Assembly: GCA_963924565.1 (NCBI GenBank)
Contig: OZ004607.1
Location: forward strand, 33,480,001 to 33,544,000
DNA from: Ascidiella aspersa
Taxonomy: Eukaryota
Length of the DNA stretch: 64,000 bases
Reading direction: 5' to 3'
In this document: positions 1-45,740 of the stretch, piece by piece
How the letters are laid out: each line of letters starts with the position of its first letter
Numbering within the stretch: position 1 is the stretch's first letter
Program-made: the position numbers and the translations under genes
The notes under the pieces: model-generated
What the model was told of the DNA's origin: nothing
The model's database searches: none
What the model saw: the letters and a program-made list of their open reading frames with translations, nothing else

Positions 1-441
1 AAAATCGGAGAAAGCCAGGGAGACCTTGATTTTTCCGTAGACACCAGTGAAGGAAGATTGGTCCTTTGCAAAAATTATTATCACCAAGCCGTTTCCGAAA
101 AGCACTCCCAGTCCAACCAAGACTACAATAGCTCCAAAGATGGCGGCTCCAACCATACTGCATTCATCGCATTGCTTGATTGGAGTGTACATGCACATCT
201 GTACCGCTCTGTTTTCACAGAAGGGCAAAAATATTGCCATTCCGATGCTGTCATCCTCCGTGGTGCTTTCAAGGGAAGAGTTACTGGGTTTGCCTGTTCC
301 ACTGATTTCACTTGCAGTTGTATCTTGATTTATAGATGACAAAGTTGTGTCTATAGGAGTAACTCCGACAGATGTTTGCTGTCCGAGACTTGGAAACAAA
401 ATCTGTGCCATGATCATGAAAACAGCGACCCATTTTTCCAT
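1..441 (-). CDS. Orphan class A GPCR paralog G0, exon 1 (gene continues off the left edge)
   Basis: ATG at 441 with an open frame to base 1: MEKWVAVFMIMAQILFPSLGQQ...IFLPFCENRAVQMCMYTPIKQCDECSM...GNGLVIIIFAKDQSSFTGVYGKIKVSLAFSDF. It has a signal peptide, the Cys motif, TM1 GNxLV and TM2 SLAxSD, and is homologous to exon 1 of genes A-E. Confidence 0.9.
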   Translation of the reverse strand, partial: MEKWVAVFMIMAQILFPSLGQQTSVGVTPIDTTLSSINQDTTASEISGTGKPSNSSLESTTEDDSIGMAIFLPFCENRAVQMCMYTPIKQCDECSMVGAAIFGAIVVLVGLGVLFGNGLVIIIFAKDQSSFTGVYGKIKVSLAFSDF

Positions 442-2210
442 ATTTATGAACATTGCTAATTACCTGAAACAACATAAAAATGCATGTAGTGTACGCTAAA
501 TACACATTAAGTGCACTTAGCCTGACGTATATTGCCGACAGGTTTTATATAGTGTTGTGGTCATGATTAGCAATACACATAATGTACCTATAATGATTTA
601 TGTTGTTAGTCTACAGATACACGGCATGTACGCATATTGAAATTTATACATTTGACTATACGTCAAGAACAATGCTATACATTATCAAATCTAACTCGCC
701 CCTTAAGCTTACTTAAATATAGTTGTAGCAAGTTTAAATACTGTGAGTTTATCAACGTTTTGAACGTTATTTGGGTTTCTAACGCCTTCTATTTCATTTA
801 AAGCTTAATTATTCTTTTCGAACATAACAAAGTTTGACTATACCCAAAATAAATCCGCATCAGAGCTAAGCCCTTTCTAGTAAACCAAGTTCAACCAACT
901 CATGCCATACTCGAGAAACAACTTTCGATTCTACCGGACCTTTTTCACCTGACCAATTATACTGCTGCTGCCAGACTTTGCGTCAATTGTGAAAATGTTC
1001 TTTCGCCAAAATTTATTAAAGTGAACGTTTCGACTACCTGTTCGGCGAAAATTAATATACCAGACAAACTAAAAAGGTTTACATGCAACAGGACATACGG
1101 TCTGCTTCACTATAAACGCTACGAAGTTTCTGCGGATACAAGAATGACGATGTTCATGTTTTCGACCAGCACTGAGCTACATCCGCTGTTGCAGAAAGGA
1201 AACAGAGGTAATCAATATTCCTTGGTGACTGAGGTCCTAGTTGACGTTGTCTGCGCTTGGCAAATTTTGTTGCATTGAAGAGCACGTACCAGCAAATCGT
1301 ATTTCCCCATTTTAAAGCCCAATTTGTCACCTTATAGTTCAGTATTTCGCAACCCTGTGGCGACCGAAATACTAATCATAGACCTAATTCAATTTTGACT
1401 GAAATTTTAGGTGAACCATACACATATAAGACAACTGTATGAAACAGTTATAAAACAACTGTATGAAACCGAAATAAATTAACATGAGCCATATCTTCCA
1501 ATTCTCCCCATGGTTTGGATCAGGTTAAGAACCAATCTTAATAAATCTAACCATATAAACTACAGTCGGCAACCTAACCAAATCAAAGCACCACCCAAAC
1601 TTATTTGACTATTTGTTTAATAAATTTAAACATGGCTCATAATCAATCGATATCGAGCAATTAAAAGTATTCCTGAAATGTTTTCTAGACAAGTCTCTTT
1701 GTTCTTAAAAGTAAGCTTTGGACGAAACTAATGCTGTTTTAACCGACTAAAAAGTTTTAGGAGACGAAAACACCGTTCCCTCTTTCAGACGGTCTTCTTA
1801 AAAAAAGGGAAAATACAGTCAAACGACACAAAGTGTGACAGTTTGAACAACACAAACGACTGCTTAAGAAAACATATATCATCAGATCTTGTCAAATTCG
1901 CATTTGTTTAGGCTAGCTAAAATCTATGGCTCGTTTAATTTTGCATTTTATTCCAGTTACGGCCTTTCAATATAAGTACACATGCAAACTCAAGGGTGTG
2001 TACATAATGTAGAACTTTTAAATAATGGCTAATAAACTAAGTAAGCAAATCCTCCTAAGTTGCACACTTAACATTTTATCATTTATTAATTATAACAACT
2101 GAAATATTAGTGAGTATTCAAACTGAGGCATGGAATCCACATGTGTAGCCTATATATACAATCAGCCCTGCCAAAGCAGTACTGAACAACGATCACGCCA
2201 TACTCATAAC

Positions 2211-9800: not shown

Positions 9801-11474
9801 TTTTATTCGATTTTAACCAACGTTTTCACGTGCAACTTTAGTTACCCTTTGTCGTATATCTCATCACACGGCATTCTATATCTTGTGACTTTGTAGCTGC
9901 AAAATCCAGTTACACACGACTGAAAAAGTTACCCCGCGATTGTTTTAAACTGAACGGCACGACTTCTTCTAGTAGCACACCTTTCTGTAAATCCTACTAT
10001 ACTGCTATGCTATTTTATGAAAATCTCCTATCATCGTCAAATGACACAACCTAAGGCGATCAATTTTGGAAGGGGCACATTTTAAGAAAGACTCTTTCAA
10101 CACATAATACTTTCCTGTGACCACTTCACACGTGGCCACGGTAGAAACATGACCACAGTATTTACATGCGCTGGCAACGATACATCCGCTTTGTTAGGGA
10201 GGATAAGGCGACCATTAATCTTCCTAGTTTATACGGCCTTGTTTTGCCTTGCTGCAGTTGGCTTTGAGTTGTTATGCTTTGGGGAGGCCAAATCCCGTAT
10301 AAACAGCATTACAATTTCTGCTAAAACAATAAATATGACTATCATAAATTTATTAAAACGGTTATGGCTACTTGGAAACCATACACACATAAGACAACTG
10401 TATGAAAACAGTTCGAAATGAATTAACATGAGCCATGTCTTCCAATTCTCCCCATGGTTTTCTTAAGTTTTGGATGAGGTTAAGAAACAATCTCAATAAA
10501 TCTAACCATATAAACTACTGCAGTCGGCAACCTAACCAAATCAAACACCACCCAAACTTATTTGACTATTTGTTTAATAAATTTAAACATGGCTCATAAT
10601 CAATCGATATCGAGCAATTACAATTATTTCACAAATGTTTTCTAGACAAGTCTCTTTGTTCCTAAAAGTAAGCTTTGGACGAAACTAATGCTGTTTTAAA
10701 AGACTAAAAAGTTTTAGGAGACGAAAACACTGTTCCTTCTTTCAGTCTATCTTCTTAAAAAAAGGAAAAATACAGCCAAACGATACAAAGTGTGACAGTT
10801 TGAACAACACAAATGACTGCTAAGAAAACATATATCATCAGATCTTGTCAAATTCGCATTTGTTTGGGCTCGCTAAAATCTATGGCTCGTTTAATTTTGC
10901 ATTTTATTCCAGTTACGGCCTTTCAATATAAGTACACATGCAAACTCAAGGGTGTGTATATAATGTAGTACTTTTAAATAATGGCTAATAAACTAAGTAA
11001 GCAAATCCTCCTAAGTTGCACACTTAACATTTTATCATTAATTAATTATAACAACTGAAATATTAGTGAGTATTCAAACTGAGGCATGGAATCCACATGT
11101 GTAGCCTATATATACAATCAGCCCTGCCAAAGCAGTACTGAACAACGATCACGCCATACTCATAACAATAAACCAGGAGGCTTATAAAACATGTTTTATT
11201 CGATTTAAGTAATCATGATCAAGACATCTAGTGTGCGGTGAGGCTTGAACTCTTGTTTTTACAAAGTTGAAAACGCTTGTATAAAATTACGCAACTCATA
11301 CCTTTTGTATTCTTTACATTGAAACTAACAAGAAATATCTGCATAAAGAGCCAGCCACAACCCGACAAAACTCAATTTACTAGATCACTTTATAAATATT
11401 TAAAGGTAGCTAAAATTGCATGTAATAGATGTGTTAAGCACTAATTTGGTAGTTGCAAAGAATAGCATCATGTT

Positions 11475-14400
11475 TTAGTGAGTTGAATTTGAAGGGGTTC
11501 GCAGAGATTTTTTGCTCCTTCTTTTTTTCTGGCTTGACGTTGAAAATCGCCTCTTCTCTTTTTCTTTTAGATGGAAAAACTTTCGGAGAAGTTCTCGCGA
11601 CGCTTTTCGAAACTTCTTGTCCATTACACTGTAAACCAGCACGTTGACTATGCTGAAAGAAAAAATAATTTAGATTACAAAGAATCGAAAGCAATTGAGC
11701 AGTGTTATACAAGTTTGATCTTTAGTCAACATTAACCAATGGATTATTTATTTACTATTAATATTGAACTGACCAAAATCTATAAACATTAAGTGAAACA
11801 GTTTTCTAATGTAAGTATATTGGTAAGTAGTTTAAAGCCCATTTAACGTCAACATGACTAATATATAATTAGATGTGATAATTATACGATAATTAGATCT
11901 GAGGAAATGGAACCTAGACAATTGTAATTGTTACAAGTTAGCAGTATTTTTATTCTTAATCTGAACTAGAACCAAGAAGTGGACTCCATTATTTACAACT
12001 GACTTTAAACTTCCTTTGTAAGGTCAGCAATATGGTAGGTACGGTAATTTATCCTATGCAGGTTGGTATGCACTTTATATAATGAAATTACAATTTGATT
12101 AATGGTGAAAATAACGACCCAAATAGACGTAGAAAGCGACATGCTTTATTGTTCAAACGTTTCGGCAGATGTTCATGCCATCATCAGTGATATGAAGGCC
12201 ACAACAGTTACACCTTGGTGGCATCCTTTATGCGTTTGAACAATAAAGCATGTCGCTATTTTTCACCATTAAACTTATGAACAGATCTGTCTATAGTTTT
12301 ACAATTTAGTGTTACAATTTGATTGTTGTCAGTAAACCAAAACTTTGACAGTTCGTCTGTATTGGTTCACCAAACCCCCTTTCAAACCATTAATATTACA
12401 AAATGGTTTTAACGCCCTAGATATCCCTTATAGCTACAAGCTATTCAGTGTTACTTTCCTAAGCTTACCTGTTTGTTAAGGCTAGGTAGTAGCACATGGT
12501 GAAGGCAAGCTGAAACTTGGGTAAATGAGTATATCTATGCCATGACAAGAAAACTGCAATCACGTATGGACCTAAAACAGAGGTATGAATTTAAACGAGT
12601 TAGTATAGCTACAAAGTAAAGTCACTCTAGTGATAACTAACAACGAGAGTGTCATACGCTAAAACAGAGAGGCGGGCAACTTCTGCAGTCCGCGGGCCTG
12701 ATATGGGAAACTGAAGTACTTGTCGGGCCGGATTCTGATCGATATATTATTATTAATTGTACTGCCATGGCCCGTTTTGTCGCATAATGGCGGCTATTGT
12801 TCTACTCTTTGAACACGGCAACACTTCCATTGCCCTGTCAACAACTAATTTTTTTTCTTGCCGACTTGAAAAAGTACTTCGGCATCCAATCGTTCATAAA
12901 CTTTACGTTTCTCGGCAAAATACAAGGAATAATATTGATGTAAACTCTAAATCTAAATATGGAACACACAATAAGACCTAAAAAATCAATAATACCATAG
13001 TATTAACCAACGACACAATAAAGCCAAACACGCAGTAATACCTACGACAGAATAATAACTATATCTAAATAAGACACAAATCTGTCGGAATAAGTCCTAA
13101 ATTCTTTCGTCGGAATAAGTCCTAAATTCTAAGGCCTATATGACCAAAACCACGCCTGAAGCTGTAGGGAGAGGGTATGGGACGATGGCGGCCATGACAT
13201 TGGCCGCTTTGGTGTTGAATTTTGGGCGCCCTGGTTTGAAGCCGCTGTTATGGCACCTGATTTTCTGGCCCTATTGGGGGTTATTGGTAGCTGGTGGGTA
13301 ATGGTGGAGTTGGTGATTTACTTCGGGGTGAGGTTTGGGGTTAGGTAAAATGTTTTATAGGCATGATTCTGGTCATTTAAGTCTTATTCCGATGGGTTTA
13401 TGACTTATTCCGATTTAGACGGTATTACGACTATTTGATATTAGTCCTATTTTGGTCTTATTCCGTACTGTGTGTTAGTTTTATTTCCAAACTGTGTGAT
13501 ATTTATGTTGCTTTTATTTCGAACTTACGGCTGGAAATCTCTAATTTTAACCCAAAACAGAAACTAAAGAATAACTAACAATCACTATTATTTGACGTAG
13601 TAAGATAGGAATTTTTGATTGCGGTAGACTGTGGCCGCGGGCAACATTATCATGTAAAACCGGAAACTGTCTGGGGGCCGCTCAAAATCCTGTCGAGGGT
13701 CGTATGTTGCCCGCCCCTGCGCTAAAAGATGGGGTCAGTACAATAAACCTAATAAGAGTAACAATACAAGTCCGATTGTGGGGTATTATTAACACCGATT
13801 CGATGACAATTTGATATCGGCGTTTTTATCATTGTTATTTTTCAGAAAATACTGCAGTATTTGTGCATTTGGAGGTAACTAAATATTTTAACAATAGGGT
13901 GCAACTATGACTTCCTTTGTTTCAATCAACCGTTTTTTCTTTTTGATGAATATTTTCTTTATAAATCAATGATGTTATTAGCGTTAGATTAGACAGAACT
14001 AACTTAAACCCAAAACACCGGAATCGTTGTTGAAATAACATACCCTGTAGCCTATCTGGCATTCTTAGTAAGAACATTTTCTAGTAAGTACACATTCAGA
14101 CAGGCACGTTTTGAAACACACACCAGCAACGATATATTAACAAAACGTTTTGAAACACACACCAGCAACAATATATTAACAAATTGTTGCATAAAAATAT
14201 GTCCAACCTGTAGTGATGGTTAATCCCAGGAGCATAAAAACCAACGTGAAATATACCATGATTTCCCGTTTCTTCCAATCTCGGTTACCCGAAGCAAACC
14301 GTTTGCGGTAAAGACAAATGCCAGTGACCAGGGTAAGAATTACCTGAGACATAAAAACAACATTGAGAACAGATTTTCTTCTGTATACTTTACACTAAAA

Positions 14401-17400
14401 TGCGGTGATGCAAAAAAGTAACATGGCGAAACTCGACAATTAGTTATTATATGTATACGCTTTTGCTATAGGCACTGGAAAAACATGGAGGAGTTTTCTT
14501 TAATTTTGTTTAGTCGTTTTGTTTAGCCGCAAAGCACTTAGGAAAGGAGCGATAACTAAGGACCCATAATGTCAAACAAATTTTAGCTGTTGTACTTAAT
14601 TATATTTGTGTTCTTCGGCAATTGTAGGTAACAATATTTGCATATCGAGTTTTGTTTTTTCATAAAAGCTGTATACGTATATCACATGACTGCTTTATCA
14701 AAGTGTAAACATCTGAAGCAGACTTGGAAAAGTAGATTGTTTTAGCTTTTTATAATAAGATTAGAATTAAAATTACATCATTTCAGTTTTTCTATAGACT
14801 AAACTTAGAAATAGATCATTTTAGTTTTTCCAAATAGATTAGATTTAGAAAAAGATCATATTCATTTTCTCAAATTAGATTCGAAAAATTAGAATTACAG
14901 AATTCTTTAAAAAACGAATTTCCACTAGAATTACATAAAATTATTTATTTAAATCGCAAATTATTCTAAAATGAATGTTAATGGTAAATATGTGTGTCCC
15001 AAATGTTATGCCTTTCAGCATAACATATGCTTTTCAGTCTGTAAAAATTACCTACATTTTAATTCAGATTCTTTGTTATGACTGAGAGACTCAAAATGGC
15101 CGTTGGACAAAGTAGTATTTTTGATCAAATGCGAATTAGATTAGAACTAGAATTAAACGAATTTAGCTCTAACTCATTGAATTAGAGAACTAATATTATC
15201 CAGTTGTACATGTCTGATTTTGGGTCCTACAGCTTTTTAGAACTTAACACTTCTTACCATCATTGTATAGGGGACGATAGCCACGAATGAAAATAATATC
15301 GTAATATAATAGTTGTTGCTGCCTGCAGTGTAGAGGAATGTGGGACAATCGTACATGTATATCACTTTTCGATGGGTCCACACTGTAAATACGTTTCAAA
15401 TTAAGTTTATTGACTTACATAAGCATGACACTTTTAAATATTTTGAACAACAAATGACGCATTATGTATTGAACTTCCATTATATATTTTTTTGATATCA
15501 AATCGGTTCGGTACCACATATTGTGCACTATAGTGACTAGCAGGCCAGAGCTTCATGGATTTTTACCATTGATTTTGTACATTTTTTTATTTAGTAAACA
15601 TGGCAAAAGCAAAATTCGGAATAAAAGACAGTTAGGAAAAGGCGTAAGGAGTTAAACCTAATAGTCGTCATAATGACGAAATCGGATTTAAACCAAATGG
15701 CCAAAATAAGGCCTATACAACCGTTTATCTAACCCAAAACACCATCCATAACTATCAATAACTTCCAGAATATGTTCAACCCTAACCCAATTGCTAACAC
15801 CACCAACTACCCGCCCATAAGCCCAAACAGGGGAAAAAATCCGGGGCCAAAACAGCGGCGCGCAAAGGCCACAGCAAAAAACAGGGTATCCTCCAATCAT
15901 TCCATATCCTTTCGCTACAGTCCTGGGCTTAATTTTGTCCATTTACGTCTAATTCTGATTAATTTTGGGCTTAATTTGACATGTTTAGATCTTATTTAGT
16001 CTATTTTAGATTATACTCTGTCGTGGTCATTATAGTCTACTGCGAATTTGGTGTTGTTATGTCGGTAGTCTTAGTACTATTATAGATTATTATCTGACTT
16101 AGATGCTGTTGCTTTGTAGGTCTTATTGTGTTTTCTACTTAAAAGTACTGTGGAATCAATGAGCTAAGTTTAACAGAAACGTATAAATATATGTTGTATA
16201 TATTATTTTTTTCCCTTTTGCTTACGGCGCACCTGGCAGCCTTCCATGGCGCACCAGAAAGAAGCGCTGCATTAGATTAAAAACTGGAGGTAACCAAATT
16301 CGTAACGTTAATAAACATTATATCTCAATAACCTAAGTTATAACGACCTTTTAAAGTTTCAATTTTATCTGTTTGCCTGTTGAGCATTGTACAAGGTCAT
16401 TTATCAGATAGGATTGGCATTGTTTTTGTGCGAAATATCGGGTATCGACATCGTAGTAAAATGACAAATATTAAAGGTCCCTTGTTTAAATTAACCAATT
16501 GTTTGTAACTTACGCGGAGCTATCGCAACTAGAAACGAAGCAAACCATGCAAGTGCAATGCCCATGCCCACAGTTTTTGGACTTTGTTGTCGGTATCTCA
16601 TTGGAAATGCAACGGCGTAGAGACGCTGTTGTGCTAGTAGCACAAGGTGATAGAATGATGCTGTGTAAATAAAGATGTGGAAAAATCCGGCCCCAAAAGA
16701 CCCCGGTGTTCCTTGGGAACGCCAGAATTTCTGAGAGATCTCGTAGCTCGTTTGATTCAGGCTCTCAACATAGTTTGGAAATATTATACCAAGAAACAGA
16801 ACACCTGCGAAAACGATAAATTCAAAATGAAAATGCATGTTAAAAAAATTCATAAATGAATAATTGTAGACTTAGTTTTATCTTTAAAATAATGTTATTT
16901 CCATTCTAAAACGTTGTTTCTTATTATGGTTTCTTATAGTTTGGAAATATTATACCAAGAAAAGAACACCCGCGAAAAAGATAAGTTTAAATTAAAATGC
17001 ATGTCCTTTGTAAATAGTCTTTGCCATGTTTTTTTTTATATTCTCAGGCATTAGTTGATATGTTAAGCAAAACGGCTACTTGGATTTGAAACAAAATAAC
17101 TCACCCGCCAAAATGTCGGAAACTGCCAATGAGACCTTGATTTTACCGTAGGTGCCATTAAAGGAAGATCTATTCCTTGCAAAGATCCAAATCACCAATG
17201 CGTTGCCGAATAGCACTCCTAGTCCAAGTACGACTACAGCAAACCCGAAAAAACCCGCAGCCGCCATACTGCAATCCTTGCATTGCTTAATTGGCGTCTT
17301 AGTACAGGATTGCTTTGCTTCCTTCTTACAAAAAGGTAAGAAAATTACAATATTAAAACGGTGCCTGTGCCCGCTGTGTTTGGAATCGTTGAAGCCATTC

Positions 17401-19380: not shown

Positions 19381-19849
19381 TAGTGGTTCTCAACCGCCGG
19401 TCCGCATCAACTTCCCTGGTCCGTCAAATATATTACAATTTTATATCTTAATTGCAAAATGCAAGATGTTGAAGGCTGCTTGTCCATCAAATTTAGAACT
19501 TCGCCAGTTCCGTAATTCTCAGCATTGTTACGTAACATAGAGTTAATGGTTTACATTGGACTTTATTCTACGTCACAATTCTGCAAGTGTTGTGCCAAAA
19601 CTGTTATAAATTAGGCTACAACTCATTTAAGTCTTAAACTTTAAGACCAGTTGTACGTGAAAAACTTCAATAGAACCACGTATAACACGTGTGATATCGA
19701 AAAGACAGCAGCAAATTGCTCATTAAGTTTCGTTTCCGTTGCATACTTTTGGCGTTATAACATTTTGGGTAGATTTTAATTTTTTGAGGTCCGCAAAATT
19801 TGTTTTGAAATTTTACCGGTCCGTATGCTCAAAAGGTTGAAAACCACTG
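19381..19849. mobile_element. hAT (Charlie/Buster-like) MITE
   Basis: TIR tagtggttctcaacc/ggttgaaaaccactg, TSD gtttaaac/gtctaaac with central TA. Confidence 0.85.
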
Positions 19850-29500: not shown

Positions 29501-30512
29501 ACGGCACCTACGGAAAGATTAAGGTCTCTATGGCGGTTTCAGACTTGTTGACGGGTAAGATGTTTTGATTATTTAAATCAAAAAGATGCCAGGTAAAAAC
29601 AAGACTCGAAACTAGGTTAGCACTGAAGTAATAACTTAACTTTAAGTAAATGACTCTAAGTGCACTTAAGTTACTTTTAACAAATAACTTGACTTGACAT
29701 AAGACAATTGGATGAACGACGCAATTTTAACCTAGGTCATTTGCAAAAACGACATGACTGAAATAAAGGGTTTTCACGTGGCTATTTTAAATCGCTTAAT
29801 CATCTTAGTTTGGCACATAAAACAATTTTCTTGTTAAACTTTGCGTTTTTCTTGTTTTGATTTGGGTTATTGCTCATATAATCGAACGTGACTTGAAAAT
29901 TGACTTGCTCTAATTATGACTTGACTGAGACTTGACTTATTGTTTATTAAAAGTACTTGAATTGAACTTAAGTTATTTCACAAATGAGTTGACTTGTACT
30001 GAAGTTATTTCACAAATGACTTGACTTAGAATAAGGTCATTTAAATATTTCTTGTTCACAACACTGTGCAGTGATCTTATACAGCAGAAATTCGTTTACA
30101 TCACAGGATTTCTGTATTTCGGTGTGATTCTACCGAACTTCGTCGAAATGCTGAACCAAACGAGCTACGAGATCCATTTAAAGTTCGAAATCACCCAAGG
30201 AACACCGGAAGCCTTAGGGGCCGGGTTTTTCCACATCTTTATCTACACAGCGTCCTTCTATCATCTTGTGTTGCTCGCACAACAACGTTTGTATGCTGTG
30301 ACTTTTCCGCTACGATACCGGGAACAGCGTCTGGTTACAGTGGGCTTCGGCATTGCACTTGTCTGGTGTATATCGTTTTTAATTGCTGTAACTCCGAGTA
30401 AGTTTATATTCGGTAATTGAATAAAATATAAACACGCATATGTGTCCAACAACTGTGATCTAGCCCTTCTGAAACTGCTTTTTGACCAACGATTACGGCT
30501 GACGTATCAATT

Positions 30513-30633
30513 GTACACCGAAAGCGATCGCATACTCGCCAAATCTGTCGATCATTGATGCAAGCAAAGCAGGCTAGAAAAAACAACTAGCCTGCAGTGA
30601 GGTTCAAACTCACGACGACCTCCGGCCAAACCG
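30513..30633 (-). mobile_element. Partial tRNA-derived SINE
   Basis: B-box/T-arm (gtgagtttgaacctcactgcaggc) and 3' body are homologous to the copy at 57600-57747. Confidence 0.6.
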
Positions 30634-32494
30634 AGAACGTGGTTTTTCATGCAGGACCCGTTTTTTTATCAAGATCTTTACTCGACCTTTTTGGTTCGGA
30701 CATTTTTTACAAAATCTATTTAAATTATTTAAAAACATCGAAAATAATGTTATGCTTAGCTATAGTATTGTGTATTGTAGTAATTTATTGTCATTTGATA
30801 CTAAATTTTAGTGGAATTTCGTGCGCTCTCAATTTAATCAGCGTATTTTATTCAATTGTTTGATTTAGTTTGAATCGCATCACTTGCTAACATTTTTACA
30901 CTTGCTTGCTTTTACAAATGTTGTTATGCCTTGGATTCAGCCAATACTTTCCTAAAGCGGCAGTTTGTTATTTTCCACTACTTTCTTCTTTTACAGTGTG
31001 GCATCCTACAATCGACTACGTGTACGACTGTGTCATTTTTCTCTTCGCGGCACGCAGCCCAAACAGATACATCACGTTACTCTTTTCATTCATGACCATG
31101 GTCCCTTATACATCGATGGTAAGATTTAAATCCGATTGGTTGCATCTATTTATTGGCCAAGTCATAGTTGAAAAGTGTTTTATTCCAATACAAAATAATT
31201 AGTTAATAAAAACAACTTACAATTTATTTAATTTGCCTTTATTGAGCCGCCGCGTCAAATGTTGGTTTCTGGTTCATGCTAAATAATATATAGGTATATT
31301 AACCTCATATGTTAACCTTATTGATTTTGATCCCATTCTTAAAGTGTACATTTTTGTTTAGTAACTAATCCAACGCCTTTTGTGCTTCTCTTTGTCACAG
31401 TGACATTAACATATTAAGACTTTTTAAGACTGGGCAAAGCCCAACATGTATTTAATCTTGTTTTAATGCAGGTGATTTTAGCTGCAGCCACTGCTATTTG
31501 CCTCCACCGCAGAAGACTTGGATCAAGAAGAAAGCGCGAGAACATGATCTTCTTCACCTTGGTTCTCATGGTTGTGGGATTAACACTTACTACAGGTAAG
31601 CATAACTTGCTTGGAAGAGGCCACTTATTAACTAGCCCATTCATAAAGATTTGTGTCACGAGTCAAAGTTTGTGTTTTAGTTTTACATAATGTCATGTAC
31701 GATAAGGTAAATCGTTTCAATAAATTCTTAAGCCTAAATATCGAGTGAAAAAGTCGAGTATACATCTTCTTAATAAATAAGTTTCGACACGCAATTTTCC
31801 TTATATAAGTGAAGTTTGAATATGTTTTAGTTACATTAACTGATGATAAAACAAGTGCGTTTTGAAATGTCTTTTTCAAGATGTTATCGATTTTCTCAAC
31901 CATTTTGGATTTAAGAGCATTCATTTACGAGCACTACCTATGTTGTTTTGTTTGGCATATCGCAGAAATTTTGTTAAGTAAAGTTATTCGTGCTTCAATA
32001 TAGGCAAACCCATAATGACTTAAGCAACACGTGCAAATTATGTGTATGTGTGTTGTACGTATACCACACACTATATAAATTGCTGCAATGTCCGTTAATG
32101 ATATTTCGTCACTTTGAGAAGACTTAATCTATGAATTTCCATGCTACCTGCTGTTAGATGTTTTAGGTAACCCAGTGTTTCTCAACCTATGTGTAGAAAC
32201 GCAAATTTGTGTCGCCGCTTGATTTGATTGGCTGACTACAGTAATTCACATGTTTAGATTTATTGAGATTAAATTTAAACGATATTTACAATTGTGAGAA
32301 AACTGTAGGACAAATACGAAGACATGACTCACAATGACTTAACTCAATTTATTTATGCTAATGTTTTAAGTTTTATTCGCTTATAGAAATTTCAGTGAAG
32401 AAATTGAGTCGCCAAGTATCGCTCTTCTATTTAAACGTAGGACGTCAGTCACAACGAAGGTTGAGAAACATTAATGTAACCTATACATAGGTCC

Positions 32495-33804
32495 CAGGGG
32501 CGGATCTAGGGGGGGGCGATATGGCCATGGCACCGTATAATGAATATTTCAAAAAAATGGTAAAATTCGTTTCGCGCACTCGCGCAAAGCACGTTTTTCA
32601 GATTTGCAGAGACGGCTTAAGTGACCATACGCTGCCCTCGACTATATAATAATAACTAACTTATATCCAAGTACAATTAAAAGGTGTTTTGTTGTTAATG
32701 CAATCTGTATCAGAACCAGCCTGCCAAAATACTTCATCCGGCCCGCCGCCTCTTTGACAAATTAAGCACGAGTCCATTTTAAATACTTTTTGACTATTTT
32801 ATGCGTGTAAATGCGAAAAATTTTAGCGTTTCGCGCTAATGATCTTTATGCATCCAGTGTGTTTACGTTTTGATTCCCTTTTTGAACTAGATCAGCGCTT
32901 CTTTGCTGTTGCGCCGTGGAAAGCTGCCAAGTGCGTCGCGGACAAACGAAAAACGTATTCAAACATAATCGACAAATATTTTTTAACCATTTTTTTTAAA
33001 TGTAACAAAACCAAGAAAAAAAAATACCTGTATACTAAATTTATCGCGTTTTTTCAAAGTAGTTTTATTACACTTTTTAATAGTAGTAGGGGGATGGCGA
33101 CGTTTGGGCTCGAATTTTAAACCAAGTATACGCTTTTTTAGCGAATGTGCGCCAAGACACTTTACTGCCTCCTTAAAAGTAATTATAAACACGTTTTTAA
33201 AGTGCAAAAAAATCCGAGGCCCACCTGATTCACAATTGTTATAAAGTTGTAATAACACAAAATCTCATTTAACATATGTTGTGCGGCCCGCAGAGACCTT
33301 TCTGAGTTTGGTTTCAGCCCGCGACTACTACACAAAGGTTGCCGACCCTTGTGTAAGGATTTGAATAACCTATCCAATGTTAGGATTAACTCTGCATAGA
33401 GTTTTGCTCATTTCAGCAACCTTATTTGGCAAAAACCAACTACAGTAACTTAAAAATTGAGAGAAGTGTCATGAAAGAGAACCACAGCTGACCGCAGCAG
33501 ACAACGCTATGGTTTTATTGCGACGTGGCCTCGGCGCTTTTTCGGTGGCATGTGCGGTTGCTCTCGCCTTTTCGAGAAAAAGCAAGATCTGTAGACAAAC
33601 CGGCCAACTGTAGAGGCTAACCTTAATACTTTTTCGTGCTTTCAAAAGGTCTGTTTTTCGCGTTATTTTGCAGGAGTTAGTTTATTCGGCCAGCCGATGT
33701 TATTTTTACCTGAATTATGACGTCACGCAATGGTATACTTTCGTAACGTCATATCGAAAAAATTTCATGGCCCTCCCCAAACTGAAATCCTAGATCCGCG
33801 CCTG
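32495..33804. mobile_element. Non-autonomous hAT element inserted at the exon 5 acceptor of gene D
   Basis: TIR caggggcggatctagg/cctagatccgcgcctg and perfect 8-bp TSD ataggtcc at 32487-32494 and 33805-33812. Absent from C. Confidence 0.92.
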
Positions 33805-35097
33805 ATAGGTCCTTATGTGATGATTGTATTTCTCTCATAGAATAAATACGCAGACCAGCCGAGTTTTCAACTTGGTTTCGTCATATGCTATTACCTGTCC
33901 TTGGCAAACAGGTACTAGTTGTAAACTAAATTAAACCTTCATCAGGCAAAGCACATTGTTTTTGTTTGTAGTATTTTGTTCGACATGAAAGTTTTAACCC
34001 TTGTTATAAAATTCATGCTCACATTTTGTGCAACTAAACTGTGAAAAACGACATATCTACCAAAGTTATGCATTTTGGGGACTATTGTAATTAACAGGCA
34101 ATACTTTACGTGGGTTTTCAGAGTTATTGCTAGCATGTTTGTTATTTAAATCAGAATAATAAAAAAATTAATAAAGTTTATAATGCTGTTCAAGTAATGT
34201 AACAATAACGATTTGACCTACTTTACACATTTTGAAACACTTTTACGACATGAGGTTATCTGTAAATAAAACATACTAAAAATGCTTTCGGCATGTATCG
34301 TTAACTTATCCAGCAAGTAATTATACCGTGCACCTTTTAAAATCAACTCCTTCAGGAGAATCAACATTTAAACCTCCTTTTTCGACCAGCATCGTCAACG
34401 TGCTGGTTTACAGCGTGATCGACGGTAAGTTTCGAAAATCGTCGCGAGAGCTACTAAGGAAGCTGTTCGGCCTAAATGCGGAACCGCGTCATTAGTCAGC
34501 ACTACCAACGAAAGGTCATTCCACCGAATCTCTGACGCTGTCAAGTCCTGAAATTGGATCTCCGCTTGTTTGAATTGTGTACAGAAACATGTGTAACTGA
34601 CCTCATTGTAATTTAAAAGTCTATAGCGCTGGTTATCAAAGCTGAGTTCGTGTTTTAGCATCGTAAGCTGCGAAAATGTACAATTTTGCAAGGGTAATTT
34701 CGTTCAAAACGTTTTGAAAACATAAAAAGTAGCTTTTATTGTTTGGAAATTCTAATATAAATCAATGAGTATTATGACGTTTTAAAGGTTTGTTGCTTTA
34801 GTTTCATGGCTCATACAAAATCAGTTAAAAGTGGGTGGACGTTTTGAAAATTGTATATAGTTTCATTGTAAGTTAAAAATGTAAATTGCTAACTGTTTAT
34901 CACCCATTTAAGTTTGGTTACTGTCATCATAATTCTTCCAGCATAGCATGGATTAATAATAACTGCAACATTTCTTAAGCTGGTAGTTTAATTAGGAATC
35001 TTTTACCTAAAGAAAACAAAAAAACAAGAAAACAATCAGTAATTAAAATACCTAGACACTAACATATAAGACTAAGTGAAGGTTAATGTGCTTTAAA

Positions 35098-40401: not shown

Positions 40402-43400
40402 ATGTATAAAATCTTTGCGGTTTTACCAATAATAGCCCAGGCGCTGTTTGGAACCTTGGGGCAGCATGAGACATCAAGCAAAGTTGTCTCATTGAACGCA
40501 TCGTTGCAAGATTCGCAAGCAACAACAGATGCTGATTATGCCCTGATCCTGCCGGGCCTAAACGAGACTTACTTCGTTGATATATCTGCATTTGAGATGA
40601 ATGGCTTCAACGATTCCAAACATAGACGGCACAGGAACTGTTTACATCTTGAAATTTTCTTACCTTTTTGTCAGAAGGAAGCAAAGCAATCCTGTACTAA
40701 GACGCCAATTAAGCAATGCAAGTATTGCAGTATGGCGGCTGCTGGTTTTTTCGGGTTTGCCTTCGTCTTACTCGGACTAGGAGCGCTATTCGGCAACGCA
40801 TTGGTGATTTGGATCTTTGCAAGGAATAGATCTTCCTTTAATGGCACCTACGGTAAAATCAAGGTCTCATTGGCAGTTTCCGACATTTTGGCGGGTGAGT
40901 TATTTTGTTTCAAATCGAAGTAGCCGTTTTGCTTAACATATCAACTAATGCCTGAGAATATCAAAATAAACATGGCGAAAACTATTTACAAAGGACATGC
41001 ATTTTAAATTTAAACTTATCTTTTTCGCGGGTGATTTTTTTCTTGATATAATATTTCCAAAATATAAGAAAGCATAATAAGAAACAACGTTTTATATTGG
41101 AAATAAATTATTTTAAAGTTAACACTAAGTCAACTATTATGCACTTACGAAATTTTTTAACATGCATTTTCATTTTGAATTTATCGTTTTTGCAGGAGTT
41201 CTGTTTCTTGGTATAATATTTCCAAACTATGTTGAAAGCCTGAATCAAACGAGCTACGAGATCTTTCAGAAATTCTGGCGTTCCCAAGGAACACCGGGGT
41301 CTTTTGGGGCCGGATTTTTCCACATCTTTATTTACACAGCATCATTCTATCACCTTGTGCTACTAGCACAACAGCGTCTCTACGCCGTTGCATTTCCAAT
41401 AAGATACCGACTACAAAGTCCAATAACTGTGGGCATGGGCATTGCACTTGCATGGTTTGCATCGTTTCTAGTTGCGATAGCTCCGGGTAAGTTACAAACA
41501 ATTGGTTAATTTGAACCAGGGACCTTTGATATTTGTCATTTTACTACGATGTCGATACCCGATATTTCGCACAAAAACAATGCCAATCCGATCTCATAAA
41601 TGACCTTATACAATGCTCAACAGGCAAAACAGATAAAATTGAAACTTTGAAAGGTCGTTATAACTCAGGTTATTGAGATATAATGTTTCTTAACGTTACG
41701 AAATTTGATTACCTCCAGTTGTTAATCTAATGCAGCGCTTCTCAACCGGTGCGCCATGGAAGGCTGCCAAGTGCGCCGTAAGCAAAAGGAAAAAAATAAT
41801 TTAATATATACAACATGTATTTATACGTTTCTGTTGAGCTTAGCTCATTTATTCCACAGTACTTTTAAGTAGAAAACACAATAAGACCTACAAAGCAACA
41901 GCATCTAAGTCAGATAATAATCTATAATAGTACTAAGACTACCGACATAACAACGCCAAATTCGCAGTAGGCCATAATGACCTTTGGTTCACGAAACCAG
42001 TTCTCTACCACTGAGTTAAAACGGGGCAACGTTAAACTGCTCGAAATTCATATTATGATCTTCACCGACTGTGCGCACATCTTGCCACACACTTACATCT
42101 TACATCTCACAAACTTTCTCTTTTATTATGTAGACTAGATAAGACCTAACATGTCGAATTAAGCCCAAAATTAATCGGAATTAGACGTAAATGATAAAAT
42201 TACGCCCAGGACTGTAGCGAAAGGGTATGGGATGATTGGGGGACACCTGTTTGTATTGGGGGACACCTGTTTGTATTGGCCGTTTGCTGTGGCCTTTGGG
42301 CGTCGCTGTTTGGCCCCGGATTTTTTCCCTTGTTTGGGCTTATGGGCGGGTAGTTGGTGGTGTTAGCAATTGGGTTAGGGTTGAAAATATTCTGGAAGTT
42401 ATTAATAGTTATGGATGGTGTTTTGGGTTAGCTTAAATAAAAGGTTGTAGGAATATAGGCCTTATTTTGGCCATTTAGGTCTAATTCCGATTTCGTCATT
42501 ATGACGACTATTAGGTATTACTCCTATTTACGTCTAACTGTCTTTTATTTCGAAATTGGCGTTGTTCTTATTTTGGTCACAAGGCTGGAGTCTCTTTAAA
42601 GATATGCAACTATAAAGCCAATATAATAAAAAAATGCATGCAATTTAAGAGAAATAAAAACTTCGCGCTCGCTTTGCTCGCAAAGTGCGCCGCCGCGTTT
42701 TCAAATGTCCCTAGGTCCGCCCCCAAGTAAAATGGTTAAGAAACAGTGATCTAATGTCTTACATTTTAAGATAGAATAACTTCGTTTCGCAAAATCGTTG
42801 AAGAAATTGTATTTGCTATGTTAAATAAATAAATAAATGTACAAATCAAAGGTAAAAATTCATAAAGCTCTGGCCTGTTAGTCACTATAGTACACAATAT
42901 GTGGTAACGAACCCATTTTCTTGGCGATGATATCAAAAAATATACTGGAAGTTCAATACATAATGCGTTATTTGTTATTCAAAATATTTAAAAGCGTCAT
43001 GCTTCATGGCAATGTAAGTCACTAAACTTAATTTAAAACTGATTTACAGTGTGGACCCATCGAAAACTCGAATACGTGTACGATTGTCCCACATTCCTCT
43101 ACACTGCGGGCAACAATAACTATTATACTGCGATATTATTTTCATTCATGGCTACCGTTCCCTATACAATGATGGTAAGAAGTGTTAAGTTTCCAAAAGC
43201 TGTAGGACCCCAGATCAGACATGTACAACTGGATAATATTAGTTCTCTAATTCAATGAGTTAGAGCTAAATTTGTTTAATTCTAGTTCTAATCTAATTCG
43301 CATTTTATCAAAAATACTACTTTGTCCAACGGCCATTTTGAGTCTCTCAGTCATAACAAAGAATCTGAATTAAAATGTAGGTAATGTTTACAGACTGAAA

Positions 43401-45722
43401 AGCATATGTTATGCTCAAAGGCATAACATTTGGGACACACATATTTACCATTAACATTCATTTTGGAATAATTTGCGATGTAATTCTAGTGGAAACTCGT
43501 TTTTTGAAGAATTCTGGAATTCTAATTTTTCTAATCTAATTTGAGAAAATTAATATGATCTTTTTCTAAATCTAATCTATTTGGAAAAAATAAAATGATC
43601 TATTTCTAAGTTTAATCTAATTTGGAAAAACTGAAATGATGTTATTTTAATTCTAATCTCATTTTAAAAAGCTAAAAAAAATCTACTTTTCCAAGTCTGC
43701 TTCAGATGTTTACACTTTGATAAAGCAGTCATGTGATATACGTATACAGCTTTTATGAAAAAAAAACTCGATATGCAAATATTGTTACCTACAATTGCCG
43801 AAGAAGCACAAATATAATTAAGTATAACAGCTGAAATTTGTTTGACAATATGGGTCCCGAATTATCGCTCCTTTCCTAAGTGCTTTGACGAAAACACTTC
43901 ATACAGTTTGCAAACACTTCATGCATTTTGCAAGTCCGTTTTTGTTTGAAATTATTTTTATTCGCGATTTAGATCACCAATAATTAAAGAGGATTTTGTT
44001 TGGAATACCAATACGTTCAAACAAATTAAAGAAAACTCCTCCATGTTTTTTCCAGTGCCTATAGCAAAAGCGTATACATATAACAACTAATTGTCGAGTT
44101 TCGCCATGTTACTTTTTTGCATCACCGCATTTTAGTGTAAAGTATACAGAAGAAAATCTGTTCTCAATGTTGTTTTATGCCTCAGGTAATTCTCACCCTG
44201 GTTACTGGCATTTGTATTTACCGCAAACGGTTTGCTTCGGGTAACCGAACTTGGAAGAAACGGGAAATCATGATATATTTCACGTTGGATCTAATGCTCC
44301 TGGGATTAACCATCACTACAGGTTGGACATATTTTTATGCAACAATTTGTTAATGTATCGTTGCTGTTGTGTGTTTCAAAACGTACTTGTCTGAATGTGT
44401 AATAGAAAATGTTCTTACTAAGAATGCCAGATACAGGGTATGTTATTTCAACAACGATTCCGGTGTTTTGGGTTTAAGTTAGTTCTGTCTAATATAATGC
44501 TAATAACATCATTGATTTATATAGAAAATATTCATCAAAACGAAAAACGGTTAATTAAAACGTGCAAATGACATGAAACAAAGGAAGTCATAGTTGCACC
44601 CTATTGTTAAAATATTTAGTTACCTCCAAATGTACAATTACTGCAGTATTTTCTGAAATATAACAATGACAAAACGCCGATTTCAATTTGGCATCGAATC
44701 GGTGTTAATAACACCCCAGAATCGGACTTGCATTGCTACGCTTAATAGGTTTGTTGTACTGACCCCAATCTTCTCGCGTATGACACTCTCGTTGTTGGTT
44801 ATCACTAGAGTGACTTTACTTTGTAGCTATACTAACTCGTTTAAATTCATACCTCTGTTTTAGGTCCATTTGTATTGGCAGTGAGCATGTCATGGGATAG
44901 ATACACTCATTTCCCCAAGTTTCAGCTTGCCTTCACTATGTGCTACTACTTAGCCTTAACAAACAGGTAAGCTTAGTAAAGTAGCTCTACATAGCTTGTA
45001 GCTATAAGGGCTTATCTAGAGCGTTAAAATTATTTTGTAATATTAATGGTTTGAAAGAGGGTTTGGTGAACCAATACAGACGAACTGTCAAAGTTTTGGT
45101 TTACTGACAACAATAAGATTGTAATTTCATTATATAAGGTGCATACCAAACTGCATAGGATAAATTACTGTACCTACCATATTCCTGACCTTGTAAAGAA
45201 AGTTTAAAAGCAATTGTAAATAATACAGTCCAATTCTTGGTTCTAGTTCATATTAAGAATAAAAATACTGCTATCTTGTAACAATTACAATTGTCTAGGT
45301 TATATTTCCTCAGATATAATTATCGTATAATTGTCACATCTAATTATATACTTTAGTCATGTTGACGTTAAATGGGCTGTAATCTACTTACATTAGAAAA
45401 CTGATTTACTTAATGTTTATAGGCTAAGTATTTCGTCAGTTCAATACTACATGTAAATAGTTCATTGGTTAATGTTAATTAAAGGGTTGATGATATAGAT
45501 CGAACTTGCAAAACAGTGTTCAATTAATCTTGATTGTTATAATTTTATTTTTCTTCCAGCATAGTCAACGTGCTGGTTTACAGTGTAATGGACAAGAAGT
45601 TTCGAAAAGCGTCGCGAGAACTTCTCCGAAAGTTTTTCCATCTAAAAGAAAAAGAGAAGACGCGAGTTTCAACGTCAAGCCAGAAAAAAAGAAGGAGCAA
45701 AAAGTTTCTGCGAACCCCTTGA
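40402..45722 (+). CDS. Orphan class A GPCR paralog E (inverted copy of the A/B type), 436 aa
   Basis: Exons 40402-40894, 41196-41486, 43050-43174, 44186-44321, 44864-44966, 45560-45722 form an open frame. The stop comes 5 codons earlier than in A and B. Confidence 0.88.
41733..42748. mobile_element. hAT element with nested fold-back MITE in gene E intron 2 (partly deleted copies in A about 7270-7930 and B about 15610-16270)
   Basis: TIR cagcgcttctcaacc/ggttaagaaacagtg and perfect TSD atctaatg (41725-41732, 42749-42756). Confidence 0.85.
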
Positions 45723-45740
45723 AATTCAACTCACTGAAAC

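What the first reader, a model, noticed from the sequence alone, without database searches (positions are those of the whole stretch)
1..45722. Expanding orphan GPCR family with rewired class A motifs and a four-cysteine N-terminal mini-domain
Seen in sequence: all six paralogs have a signal peptide, a Ser/Thr-rich stalk and an invariant PFC-x7-C-x7-C-x2-C motif just before TM1. In the five full-length copies position 3.25 is Ala/Ser instead of Cys, DRY reads QRL, CWxP reads TTGP, NPxxY reads NVLVY, and ECL2 keeps one Cys (YDC). Established: C3.25-ECL2 is the near-universal class A disulfide, and D3.49, W6.48 and P7.50 are activation microswitches. Inference: this is a lineage-specific receptor family whose N-terminal Cys module caps the pocket and which activates atypically. 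Its birth-and-death pattern fits a chemosensory or immune/recognition role.
Basis: partly seen in the sequence, partly recalled or inferred. Interest (0 to 1): 0.75.

Follow-up and report, generated by a model that had tools for sequence, protein, structure and literature searches.

The report
Sea-squirt orphan receptor gene cluster
This stretch of a sea-squirt genome holds six recently copied genes of a large receptor family found so far only in sea squirts, which has swapped several normally fixed receptor features for a small cysteine knot at its outer end; what the receptors detect is unknown.

Summary
Six paralogs carry PFC-x7-C-x7-C-x2-C just before TM1. The five that lie whole in the window read A/S at 3.25, QRL, TTGP (only across an intron), NVLVY and YDC. 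Spliced contigs confirm all five introns of copy D. Only C, D and F are open: B has a stop at codon 17, and E has a stop in exon 5 and a shortened tail. C+D and F+E are the arms of one inverted segmental duplication.

The family is not private to this locus. This genome holds about 50 loci. Ciona, Phallusia and Clavelina have relatives with the same motif set, some of them behind Sushi arrays. Every relative whose source I looked up is ascidian, and no solved GPCR family is specifically close. In Ciona the family is auto-named 'relaxin receptor 2', so it is probably among the 'Unclassified LGR-like' receptors of Kamesh 2008.

A new point concerns relatives that carry a fifth N-terminal Cys. 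They always also carry an ECL3 Cys (19 with both, about 24 with neither, 0 with only one). This argues that the module sits on the bundle next to ECL3. The window genes lack this tether, and their ECL2 Cys is confined to the A-F clade.

Ligand, coupling and tissue remain unknown. A link to the Ciona LF or YFV peptide receptors could not be tested. This scan has noted other ascidian GPCR families, not this one.

The parts
1..441 (-). Copy A, exon 1 only (signal peptide, stalk, Cys module at 225-160, TM1). The rest of the gene lies left of the window.
   Evidence: its exon 2 lies at G000:C1:33479010-33479297 and its exon 3 with YDC in L009
3123..9274 (-). Copy B, six exons: 9274-8770, 8466-8176, 7042-6918, 5981-5846, 4215-4113, 3300-3123. 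TGA at codon 17 (9226-9224). Cys module at 9001-8936. Mosaic: like F in exons 1-2 and like C in exons 3-6.
11475..17597 (-). Copy C, open throughout. Exons: 17597-17105, 16804-16514, 15382-15258, 14343-14208, 12571-12469, 11652-11475. Cys module at 17336-17271.
   Evidence: AG/GT at all internal exon ends
22785..26570 (-). Copy D, open throughout. Exons: 26570-26120, 25527-25237, 24550-24429, 24129-24006, 23524-23422, 22962-22785. Cys module at 26351-26286.
   Evidence: all five introns seen as joints in spliced contigs of run X3 (records 18 and 19)
29104..34495 (+). Copy E. Exons: 29104-29554, 30107-30397, 30997-31118, 31472-31595, 33809-33911, 34390-34495. TAG at 33838-33840 in exon 5 and a shortened C-terminal tail: a likely pseudogene. 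Cys module at 29323-29388.
40402..45722 (+). Copy F, open throughout. Exons: 40402-40894, 41196-41486, 43050-43174, 44186-44321, 44864-44966, 45560-45722. Cys module at 40663-40728. Asp in TM6 (FTLDLMLLG).
11472..27155 (.). Left arm (C plus D) of an inverted segmental duplication.
   Evidence: blastn of the window's left part against its right part: colinear inverted matches at 83-96% identity
28502..45740 (.). Right arm (E plus F) of the same inverted duplication. The spacer is about 27156-28501.

Best explanation
The window holds six members of a large orphan family of rhodopsin-like (class A) GPCRs that, as far as I could see, is confined to ascidians. It is a hot spot of recent gene turnover.

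Shown here:
- The genes have six exons, and copy D is transcribed and spliced as modelled.
- C+D and F+E arose by one inverted segmental duplication. B is a tandem, partly converted copy. Two of the five whole copies carry premature stops.
- The older split (D versus C/F) evolved under purifying selection (dN/dS about 0.2).
- The family keeps N1.50, D2.50, S3.39, R3.50, W4.50, P5.50, P6.50, N7.45/S7.46/N7.49 and Y7.53.
- Family-wide it has lost C3.25, the acidic 3.49, W6.48 and P7.50 (the pattern is [QE]R[LFI], TxxP, NSxVNVxxY).
- It carries four near-invariant cysteines directly before TM1, behind a variable glycosylated stalk. In some Clavelina relatives an array of Sushi domains stands there instead.

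Inferred:
- The four cysteines form a small disulfide-stapled knot. It takes over the job of the missing TM3-ECL2 disulfide in holding the outer face together, and it lies over the TM1/TM7/ECL3 side of the pocket.
- The argument is that in most relatives a fifth Cys beside it covaries perfectly with an ECL3 Cys.
- The variable ectodomain and the knot would then present or gate the ligand.
- The intact sodium-site and R3.50/Y7.53 residues suggest ordinary G-protein signalling with a shifted activation set-point. A neutral 3.49 usually favours the active state.
- The window genes have lost the ECL3 tether and gained a clade-specific ECL2 Cys.
- The ligand class is unknown.
For: - Gene models and stops.
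- Splicing: records 18 and 19 (joints 24127/24427, 24550/25237, 25528/26122; pieces 22895-22962, 23422-23522, 24004-24076).
- Duplication history.
- Family size in this genome: 53 exon-2 matches and 44 exon-1 matches. 20 of 20 fetched exon-1 pieces keep the four cysteines.
- Relatives: 95 representatives at E <= 0.001 out of 1.84 billion proteins, best 4e-14.
- Sources: I looked up the source of 20 of those 95 representatives, and two more carry a source name. The 12 with family motifs plus P0093 are ascidian. Four are aminergic-like or unnamed receptors of other animals, and three carry no name.
- Shared motifs.
- Pfam: 7tm_1 at 49-70 bits in 8 of 8 full-length relatives, Sushi in 2 of 8.
- Cysteine covariation. 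Public representatives: 16 with both, 5 with neither, 0 with one only, needing 4 changes on the best tree, at least 3 forced by well-supported branches. In this genome, 3 of 3 genes with the fifth Cys have the ECL3 Cys, a prediction made before looking. About 19 genes without the fifth Cys have no Cys in that column.
- Selection: D-C 0.21, D-F 0.24.
Against: - No structure could be predicted, so the disulfide pairing and the cap position are inferred from covariation only. The independent-pairs test has 3 pairs and cannot reach significance.
- The window genes lack the fifth Cys and the ECL3 Cys, so the tether argument applies to relatives, not to them.
- One gene without the fifth Cys (L064) has a Cys five residues upstream of the ECL3 column.
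- Expression evidence is thin. RNA run X4 gave a depth of about 1-2 reads over D, including intron sequence, with 6% of the run read. X3's kind is not on record and is inferred from its spliced contigs.
- Recent copies show dN/dS of 0.3-1.05 on very few changes, which fits relaxed constraint as well as diversification.
- Placement among class A groups is contradictory. The profile against solved structures puts beta-2 adrenergic, adenosine A2A and dopamine D2 first within a flat list of 538. The language-model atlas puts LGR, TSH and relaxin receptor clusters first.
- 'Confined to ascidians' rests on searches with limited reach: one exon as profile, a capped word search that scored only 8,000 candidates, and a word search that yielded 4 candidates.
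Confidence: 0.6

Rival explanations
1. The family is, or includes, the urochordate-only receptors for Ciona-specific neuropeptides (the Ci-LF-R or Ci-YFV-R clades of Shiraishi et al. 2019). The window genes would then be peptide receptors whose ligands are fast-evolving ascidian peptides.
For: Shiraishi 2019 (PMC6475428; sections 7 and 8 and passages read) describes the Ci-LF-Rs as a urochordate-only clade. They share 21-26% identity with cannabinoid, adenosine and adrenergic receptors and multiplied within Ciona. My family profile hits beta-2 adrenergic, adenosine A2A/A2B and dopamine receptors first. A single member also hits cannabinoid receptor 1. Public names for members include 'adenosine receptor A3-like' and 'octopamine receptor beta-like'.
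Against: No sequence, accession or motif of those receptors is given in the main text. Their sequences are in Dataset S3, which I could not see. The paper mentions neither N-terminal cysteines nor a missing DRY motif (0 occurrences of 'cysteine' and 'DRY'). Several ascidian-only GPCR clades exist, so matching descriptions are weak evidence. Mucin stalks of up to 300 residues and Sushi arrays are unusual for short-peptide receptors.
Confidence: 0.2
2. The family is a chemosensory or environmental-cue repertoire (food, settlement or conspecific cues). It would be comparable in genomic behaviour to vertebrate odorant or vomeronasal receptors and to lineage-specific GPCR expansions in other invertebrates.
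For: There are about 50 loci in tandem clusters on several chromosomes. The window shows recent duplication, gene conversion and 2 of 5 copies with stops. The ectodomain is variable. A 36-base patch just before the module has about 10 differences between C and F, against 1-2 in the flanks. The listing abstract of Niimura 2009 concerns odorant-receptor genes across 23 chordates. That ascidians lack them is my recollection and I did not open the paper.
Against: No tissue information was available. dN/dS between recent copies is at most about 1, on few changes. The transmembrane pocket residues are very conserved among paralogs, with the TM3 stretch identical in all five, unlike odorant receptors, which vary in the pocket.
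Confidence: 0.2
3. The family is an immune or self/non-self recognition repertoire on blood cells or epithelia. The mucin stalks or Sushi arrays would bind other cells' or microbes' surfaces.
For: Sushi (complement control) arrays are fused to the same 7TM and Cys module in Clavelina. The stalks are heavily Ser/Thr/Pro-rich and 50-300 residues long. Turnover is rapid.
Against: No expression or polymorphism data bear on this. The window genes have short stalks of 51-70 residues and no recognisable binding domain.
Confidence: 0.1
4. Part of the apparent expansion is an assembly artefact: the two inverted arms, or B and C, are diverged haplotypes of one locus placed side by side.
For: The arms differ by about 4-16% in DNA, which is within the range I recall for ascidian heterozygosity. 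A second individual's contigs (X2) differ from D at 14 places in exon 2.
Against: The arms are inverted around a 1.3 kb spacer inside one contiguous stretch without N, which is not the usual form of haplotype duplication. They differ by large insertions, such as the 300-base repeat in D only. E carries stops that D lacks. The DNA contigs of X1 match D exactly over several hundred bases (records 2-7). The family has about 50 further loci in any case.
Confidence: 0.05

Closest known systems
Ciona 'Unclassified LGR-like' and 'Other Rhodopsin' receptors of Kamesh et al. 2008 (PMC2396169)
   Same: These are ascidian rhodopsin-type GPCRs with short N-termini, no recognisable domain and no orthologs elsewhere. 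Ciona members of my family are auto-named 'relaxin receptor 2'. [quoted passage not shown]
   Different: The paper treats them as possibly fragmentary. It leaves them out of its trees and describes neither motifs nor a Cys module. Which of its categories holds this family is in additional files I could not see. My searches do not support a specific LGR relationship: no LGR appears among the best 60 solved chains, and only the language-model atlas points that way.
Chemokine, angiotensin and apelin-type class A receptors with an N-terminus-to-ECL3 disulfide (recalled from general knowledge, not from a call)
   Same: In most relatives a Cys just before TM1 covaries with a Cys in ECL3. That is the pattern expected of a disulfide tying the N-terminus to the TM6-TM7 loop. 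The apelin receptor is among the profile's matches, and one Ciona member is auto-named 'apelin receptor-like'.
   Different: Those receptors keep the canonical C3.25-ECL2 disulfide and the DRY, CWxP and NPxxY motifs, and they have no four-Cys knot. The window genes lack the tether altogether.
MECA-group receptors (melanocortin, S1P/LPA, cannabinoid) that lack the TM3-ECL2 disulfide (recalled from general knowledge)
   Same: These are class A receptors that work without C3.25 and in which the N-terminus folds over the pocket. Cannabinoid receptor 1 is among the sequence matches.
   Different: They keep D/E3.49, W6.48 and P7.50 and have no conserved four-Cys module. Similarity is no higher than to aminergic receptors.
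Ascidian LDLa-repeat GPCRs
   Same: They are also ascidian-specific, greatly expanded class A receptors with modular Cys-rich ectodomains.
   Different: Per those notes they are intronless and carry LDLa arrays, whereas this family has six exons and no LDLa. They did not appear among the 53 own-genome matches of the exon-2 profile. A direct comparison failed, because the one stretch I could still fetch held no 7TM.

Membership tests
Class A (rhodopsin-like) GPCR, Pfam 7tm_1 | Significant match to PF00001 over seven helices | tested here: met
   Single exons fall below the 30.5-bit cut-off (25.8 and 23.3 bits for exon 2, 13.1 bits for exon 1). This is because the model was searched exon by exon. 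All 8 full-length relatives scanned score 49-70 bits over profile positions 1-260.
Class A (rhodopsin-like) GPCR, Pfam 7tm_1 | Hallmark residues N1.50, D2.50, R3.50, W4.50, P5.50, P6.50, N7.49 and Y7.53 | tested here: met
   Read from the exon translations: GN in TM1, SD in TM2, QRL, VW/AW in TM4, VPY in TM5, TTGP, NVLVY. The numbering was done by hand, counting from the motifs.
Class A (rhodopsin-like) GPCR, Pfam 7tm_1 | C3.25-ECL2 disulfide, acidic 3.49, W6.48 and P7.50 | tested here: not met
   3.25 is A or S, 3.49 is Q, 6.48 is T and 7.50 is V in all five copies. The same holds across the family. These features are near-universal but not strictly defining, so membership stands, as an atypical subfamily.
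LGR / relaxin-receptor group (delta rhodopsins) | LRR and/or LDLa ectodomain | tested here: not met
   No Pfam domain was found in exon 1 of D or F at E <= 1 other than a weak 7tm_1 or YrhC match. Relatives have none, or Sushi.
LGR / relaxin-receptor group (delta rhodopsins) | 7TM domain specifically closest to LGRs | tested here: inconclusive
   The atlas's nearest clusters are GRL101-like, TSH, FSH, RXFP1 and LGR4 at 0.88-0.92. No LGR appears among the best 60 solved chains by phmmer or by profile. The public names are automatic.
Urochordate LF / YFV neuropeptide receptor clades (Shiraishi 2019) | Sequence membership in those clades | not testable with these tools
   The sequences are only in a supplement that is closed. 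Only Ghost database ids appear in the text.
Birth-and-death receptor repertoire (chemosensory or immune type) | Many tandem paralogs with pseudogenes and recent duplication | tested here: met
   53 exon-2 matches in clusters, 2 of 5 whole copies with stops, inverted and tandem duplication and a mosaic copy.
Birth-and-death receptor repertoire (chemosensory or immune type) | Positive selection on ligand-contact parts, and expression in sensory or immune cells | tested here: inconclusive
   dN/dS is 0.32-1.05 between recent copies on few changes. There is a local variable patch before the module. Tissue of expression is not available.

The most novel reading that the evidence does not exclude
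Ascidians evolved their own branch of class A receptors. In it a four-cysteine juxtamembrane knot, ancestrally tied to ECL3, replaced the canonical TM3-ECL2 disulfide. The knot serves as a universal socket on which very different ectodomains (mucin stalks of 50-300 residues, Sushi arrays) are mounted. The family would then be a modular surface-recognition repertoire for conspecific, microbial or settlement cues. Its signal would pass from the ectodomain through the knot into a 7TM core with a reset activation switch (Q3.49, T6.48, V7.50).
Probability: 0.2. Interest if true: 0.7.

Novelty: new variant of a known kind. Interest (0 to 1): 0.5.

Why it matters
Ascidians are the closest invertebrate relatives of vertebrates, and they lack vertebrate-type odorant receptors (recalled, not checked here). 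How they sense chemicals, partners and microbes is poorly known.

A family of about 50 genes that turns over quickly, is conserved in its core and is exposed at the surface is an obvious candidate for such a role.

For receptor biology, the family is a natural experiment. It signals, or at least survives selection, without the TM3-ECL2 disulfide, the acidic residue of DRY, the toggle Trp and the Pro of NPxxY. The covarying cysteine pair gives a concrete, testable picture of how the outer face is held together instead.

For annotation, the public names of these proteins contradict each other and should not be relied on. They include relaxin receptor 2, TAAR9-like, adenosine A3-like, octopamine beta-like, apelin-like and SVEP1-like.

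Tried and rejected
- LGR/relaxin identity. Public names and the atlas suggest it. Sequence and profile searches of solved structures list no LGR among the best 60, and no LRR or LDLa domain is present. I kept it only as 'probably what Kamesh 2008 called LGR-like'.
- Direct comparison with this genome's LDLa-GPCRs. The Pfam LDLa search gave places but no loci. The one small stretch I then fetched ended after the LDLa repeats without a 7TM. I abandoned this line.
- The two weakest own-genome exon-2 matches (C8:26354057 and C9:2692111) are other GPCRs, not family members.
- The word search with the full family alignment was swamped: 8,000 candidates were scored and only 3 family members recovered. 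It is not a census.
- A known domain for the Cys module: none in Pfam. The module-only word search found 4 Ciona proteins, but its reach is short.
- Not in print: three full-text searches and one for the LF/YFV receptors turned up no description of this motif set or module. Subscription journals and supplements were not covered.
  - Kamesh 2008: passages read.
  - Shiraishi 2019: passages and section 8 read.
  - All other papers: search listing only.
  - I did not ask for the supplements of these two papers. They may name the family's Ciona members and settle the LF-R question.
- The ECL2 Cys as the retained canonical Cys: rejected.
- The spliced model was searched exon by exon. I made no joined protein, so there is no Pfam score, fold or tree for a whole window protein. 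Public full-length homologs stood in.

Full report
WHAT IS THERE. The window is G000:C1:33480001-33544000 of a 309 Mb genome. Earlier notes of this scan call it a sea squirt, and my searches agree: the close relatives whose sources I looked up are all ascidian. The window has no N.

Open frames and motif scans show six copies of one gene:
- A: exon 1 only, 1-441, minus strand.
- B: 9274-3123, minus strand.
- C: 17597-11475, minus strand.
- D: 26570-22785, minus strand.
- E: 29104-34495, plus strand.
- F: 40402-45722, plus strand.

By comparing the copies and reading the splice sites I derived a six-exon model with AG/GT at every internal exon end in all five whole copies. The exons hold:
- Exon 1: signal peptide, stalk, Cys module, TM1 and the start of TM2.
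- Exon 2: the rest of TM2, then TM3 and TM4.
- Exon 3: ECL2 and TM5.
- Exon 4: ICL3 and most of TM6.
- Exon 5: the end of TM6, ECL3 and the start of TM7.
- Exon 6: the NVLVY motif and the tail.

Whole-protein statements therefore rest on public full-length homologs.

CHECK OF THE OBSERVATION.
- The motif PFC-x7-C-x7-C-x2-C is present in 6 of 6 copies. QRL, YDC and NVLVY are each present in 5 of 5.
- TTGP exists only across the exon 4/5 junction.
- The exon-2 peptides have no Cys ahead of TM4. Counting back from R3.50 gives S (B, C, F) or A (D, E) at 3.25.
- Contigs of public run X3 from the same organism are spliced exactly at the predicted places for all five introns of D (records 18 and 19).
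- RNA run X4 gave only about 1-2 reads of depth, on the strand expected for a minus-strand gene, with some intron cover.

- B has TGA at codon 17.
- E has TAG in exon 5 and a shortened tail, so three copies are open.
- The stalk is 35-37% Ser+Thr in A, D and E but 17-20% in B, C and F.
- 'Signal peptide' is my reading of the hydrophobic start. No predictor was available.

HOW THE COPIES AROSE.
- B, C and F are about 95% identical in DNA, introns included, and D and E about 93%. D and F no longer match in blastn.
- The block C+D (11472-27155) is an inverted copy of F+E (45740-28502), at 83-96% identity around a 1.3 kb spacer. This points to a single palindromic duplication of a two-gene unit.
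- Synonymous divergence agrees: 0.077 for C-F and 0.067 for D-E.
- B is a tandem copy. It has no synonymous difference from F in exon 2 and none from C in exons 3-6, so it is a mosaic, as gene conversion or unequal crossing-over would give.
- dN/dS is 0.21-0.24 between the two old types. Between recent copies it is 0.61 (C-F), 0.69 (B-F), 1.05 (B-C) and 0.32 (D-E), on few changes.
- This shows long-term constraint. Recent relaxation or diversification cannot be told apart.
- A 36-base patch just before the module is much more variable among B, C and F than its flanks, and B has a 12-base insertion there.

THE FAMILY.
- An exon-2 profile finds 53 places in this genome. They lie in clusters on contig 1 (27.86-27.96, 28.25-28.50 and 33.37-33.52 Mb) and on contigs 2, 3, 4, 6, 8 and 9.
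- The two weakest places that I opened are other GPCRs.
- An exon-1 profile finds 44 places.
- All 20 exon-1 pieces that I fetched keep four cysteines with the same spacing (one has x6 for the first gap). They stand behind Ser/Thr/Pro-rich stalks of about 50-300 residues.
- The exon-2 profile, scored by HMMER against 1.84 billion representative proteins, gave only 95 hits at E <= 0.001, with the best at 4e-14.
- Full-length hits share the module (x7 or x10 in the first gap), [QE]R[LFIV] in place of DRY, TxxP in place of CWxP and NSxVNVxxY in place of NPxxY.
- I looked up 20 of the 95. Those with the family motifs come from Clavelina lepadiformis, Phallusia mammillata and Ciona intestinalis, and Ciona savignyi appears. 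The non-ascidian ones are weak hits with ordinary aminergic-type receptors, three of them unnamed.
- Some Clavelina members carry five or more Sushi repeats ahead of the same module.
- Public names contradict each other: relaxin receptor 2, TAAR9-like, adenosine A3-like, octopamine beta-like, apelin-like and SVEP1-like.

PLACE AMONG KNOWN RECEPTORS.
- Pfam sees only 7tm_1, and weakly nematode Srx.
- Against solved structures, one member reaches only 2e-9 (histamine H4).
- The 17-sequence profile gives a flat list of 538 chains headed by beta-2 adrenergic, adenosine A2A and dopamine D2 (2e-22 to 7e-18). No LGR is among the 60 shown.
- The language-model atlas instead lists LGR-type clusters first (0.88-0.92). 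Its structure search lists assorted peptide receptors at TM 0.62-0.66.
- A word search with the family alignment shows a gap from 1e-114 (family) to 1e-21 (insect D2-like receptors), but it was capped and recovered only three members.
- On a quick tree the 21 family representatives separate from four aminergic outgroups with SH-aLRT 99. That test is trivial with so few outgroups.
- I conclude that this is a deeply divergent class A subfamily without a specific known sister.

LITERATURE.
- Kamesh et al. 2008 (passages read) list 14 'Unclassified LGR-like' receptors in Ciona. These have a short N-terminus, no domain and a relaxin-receptor-like TM region. They also list 23 'Other Rhodopsins'. They call these groups probably ascidian-specific and leave them out of the trees. 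No motifs are described.
- Since Ciona and Phallusia members of my family are auto-named 'relaxin receptor 2', the family was probably counted there. The lists are in additional files I could not see.
- Shiraishi et al. 2019 (passages and section 8 read) deorphanised urochordate-only receptor clades for Ciona LF and YFV peptides. Their description of the LF receptors fits what I see: 21-26% identity to cannabinoid, adenosine and adrenergic receptors, and multiplication within Ciona.
- Their sequences are in a closed supplement, so the link is untested.
- Three further full-text searches found no description of the module or motif set.

HOW IT MAY WORK. What the sequence shows directly:
- The core positions that make a class A receptor signal are kept (N1.50, D2.50, S3.39, R3.50, W4.50, P5.50, P6.50, N7.45, S7.46, N7.49, Y7.53).
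- C3.25, the acidic 3.49, Y5.58, W6.48 and P7.50 are replaced. The numbering is by hand.

The new observation is a covariation:
- Most relatives have a fifth Cys five or six residues ahead of the module (CGFPxFC). Exactly those have a Cys in ECL3.
- Among 21 public representatives with both regions, 16 have both, 5 have neither and none has only one. This needs 4 changes on the best tree, at least 3 of them forced by well-supported branches.
- I then predicted that the three genes of this genome that have the fifth Cys would have the ECL3 Cys, and all three do.
- The roughly 19 genes without the fifth Cys have no Cys in that column. One of them (L064) has a Cys five residues earlier.
- The simplest reading is a disulfide that ties the module to the TM6-TM7 loop. 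This is the kind of N-terminus-to-ECL3 bridge known from chemokine and angiotensin receptors (recalled).
- That places the four-Cys knot on the outer face, next to TM1/TM7.
- One relative (P0032) has lost the second and third cysteines together and kept the first and fourth. This hints at a 1-4 / 2-3 pairing, but it is a single case.

The window genes have neither the fifth Cys nor the ECL3 Cys. Their ECL2 Cys (YDC) is shared only by A-F. The neighbouring genes read YDD and the other clusters H or Q. It is therefore not the retained canonical Cys, and I can name no partner for it. Whether Q3.49, T6.48 and V7.50 change the activation set-point is an inference from what is generally known about these positions.

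WHAT COULD NOT BE DONE.
- Runs are coded, so no tissue can be named.

VERDICT.
- The family is ascidian-wide, large and already sitting unnamed or mis-named in databases.
- The local 'six paralogs' are three sequence types multiplied by very recent duplication, and two copies are already broken.
- The cap idea gains indirect support from relatives.
- The functional guesses remain open, with a peptide-receptor reading as a serious rival.

Noticed in passing
window 11472-27155 and 28502-45740: The two-gene blocks C+D and F+E form a large imperfect palindrome, with arms of about 16-17 kb, 83-96% identity and a spacer of about 1.3 kb.
   Followed up: partly
window 23559-23860 (intron 4 of D): A repeat of about 300 bases is present in D and missing at the matching place of E. 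The first look found 1763 candidate copies in the genome, and the 40 scored are 94-98% identical. Read depth is very high, and reads lie on both strands in RNA run X4. It is a young SINE- or MITE-like element.
   Followed up: partly
window 8936-9100, 17271-17420, 40579-40728: A 36-base patch just before the Cys module differs at about 10 places between C and F, while the flanks differ at 1-2. B has a 12-base duplication there. This may be a local hot spot of change in the ectodomain.
   Followed up: partly
window 57673-57747, minus strand: A tRNA gene, the only Rfam match at gathering score in the window. The hammerhead motif that another note of this scan places at 12101-12311 did not reach Rfam's gathering score in that scan.
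   Followed up: no
public proteins P0001, P0026, P0040, P0041, P0057 (Clavelina lepadiformis where looked up): These are class A GPCRs of this family with arrays of Sushi (complement control) repeats ahead of the Cys module, auto-named SVEP1-like. I know of no described Sushi-array rhodopsin-type receptor (recalled; one search).
   Followed up: partly
L051:1053-2570, minus strand (G000:C8:26353053-26354570): An intronless 505-residue GPCR with no ectodomain. It reads DRL for DRY and NSLWNFFIY for NPxxY, so it is another receptor in this genome without P7.50.
   Followed up: no
window 25216-25519 (exon 2 of D): Contigs of a second DNA sample (X2) differ from the window at 14 places in 304 bases, while those of X1 match exactly. 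This is either a diverged allele or the E copy laid on D. It hints at copy or allele variation between individuals.
   Followed up: no
window 44186-44321 (exon 4 of F): Copy F has Asp where B and C have Val inside TM6 (FTLDLMLLG against FTLVFMLLG). The frame is open but the protein may be impaired.
   Followed up: no
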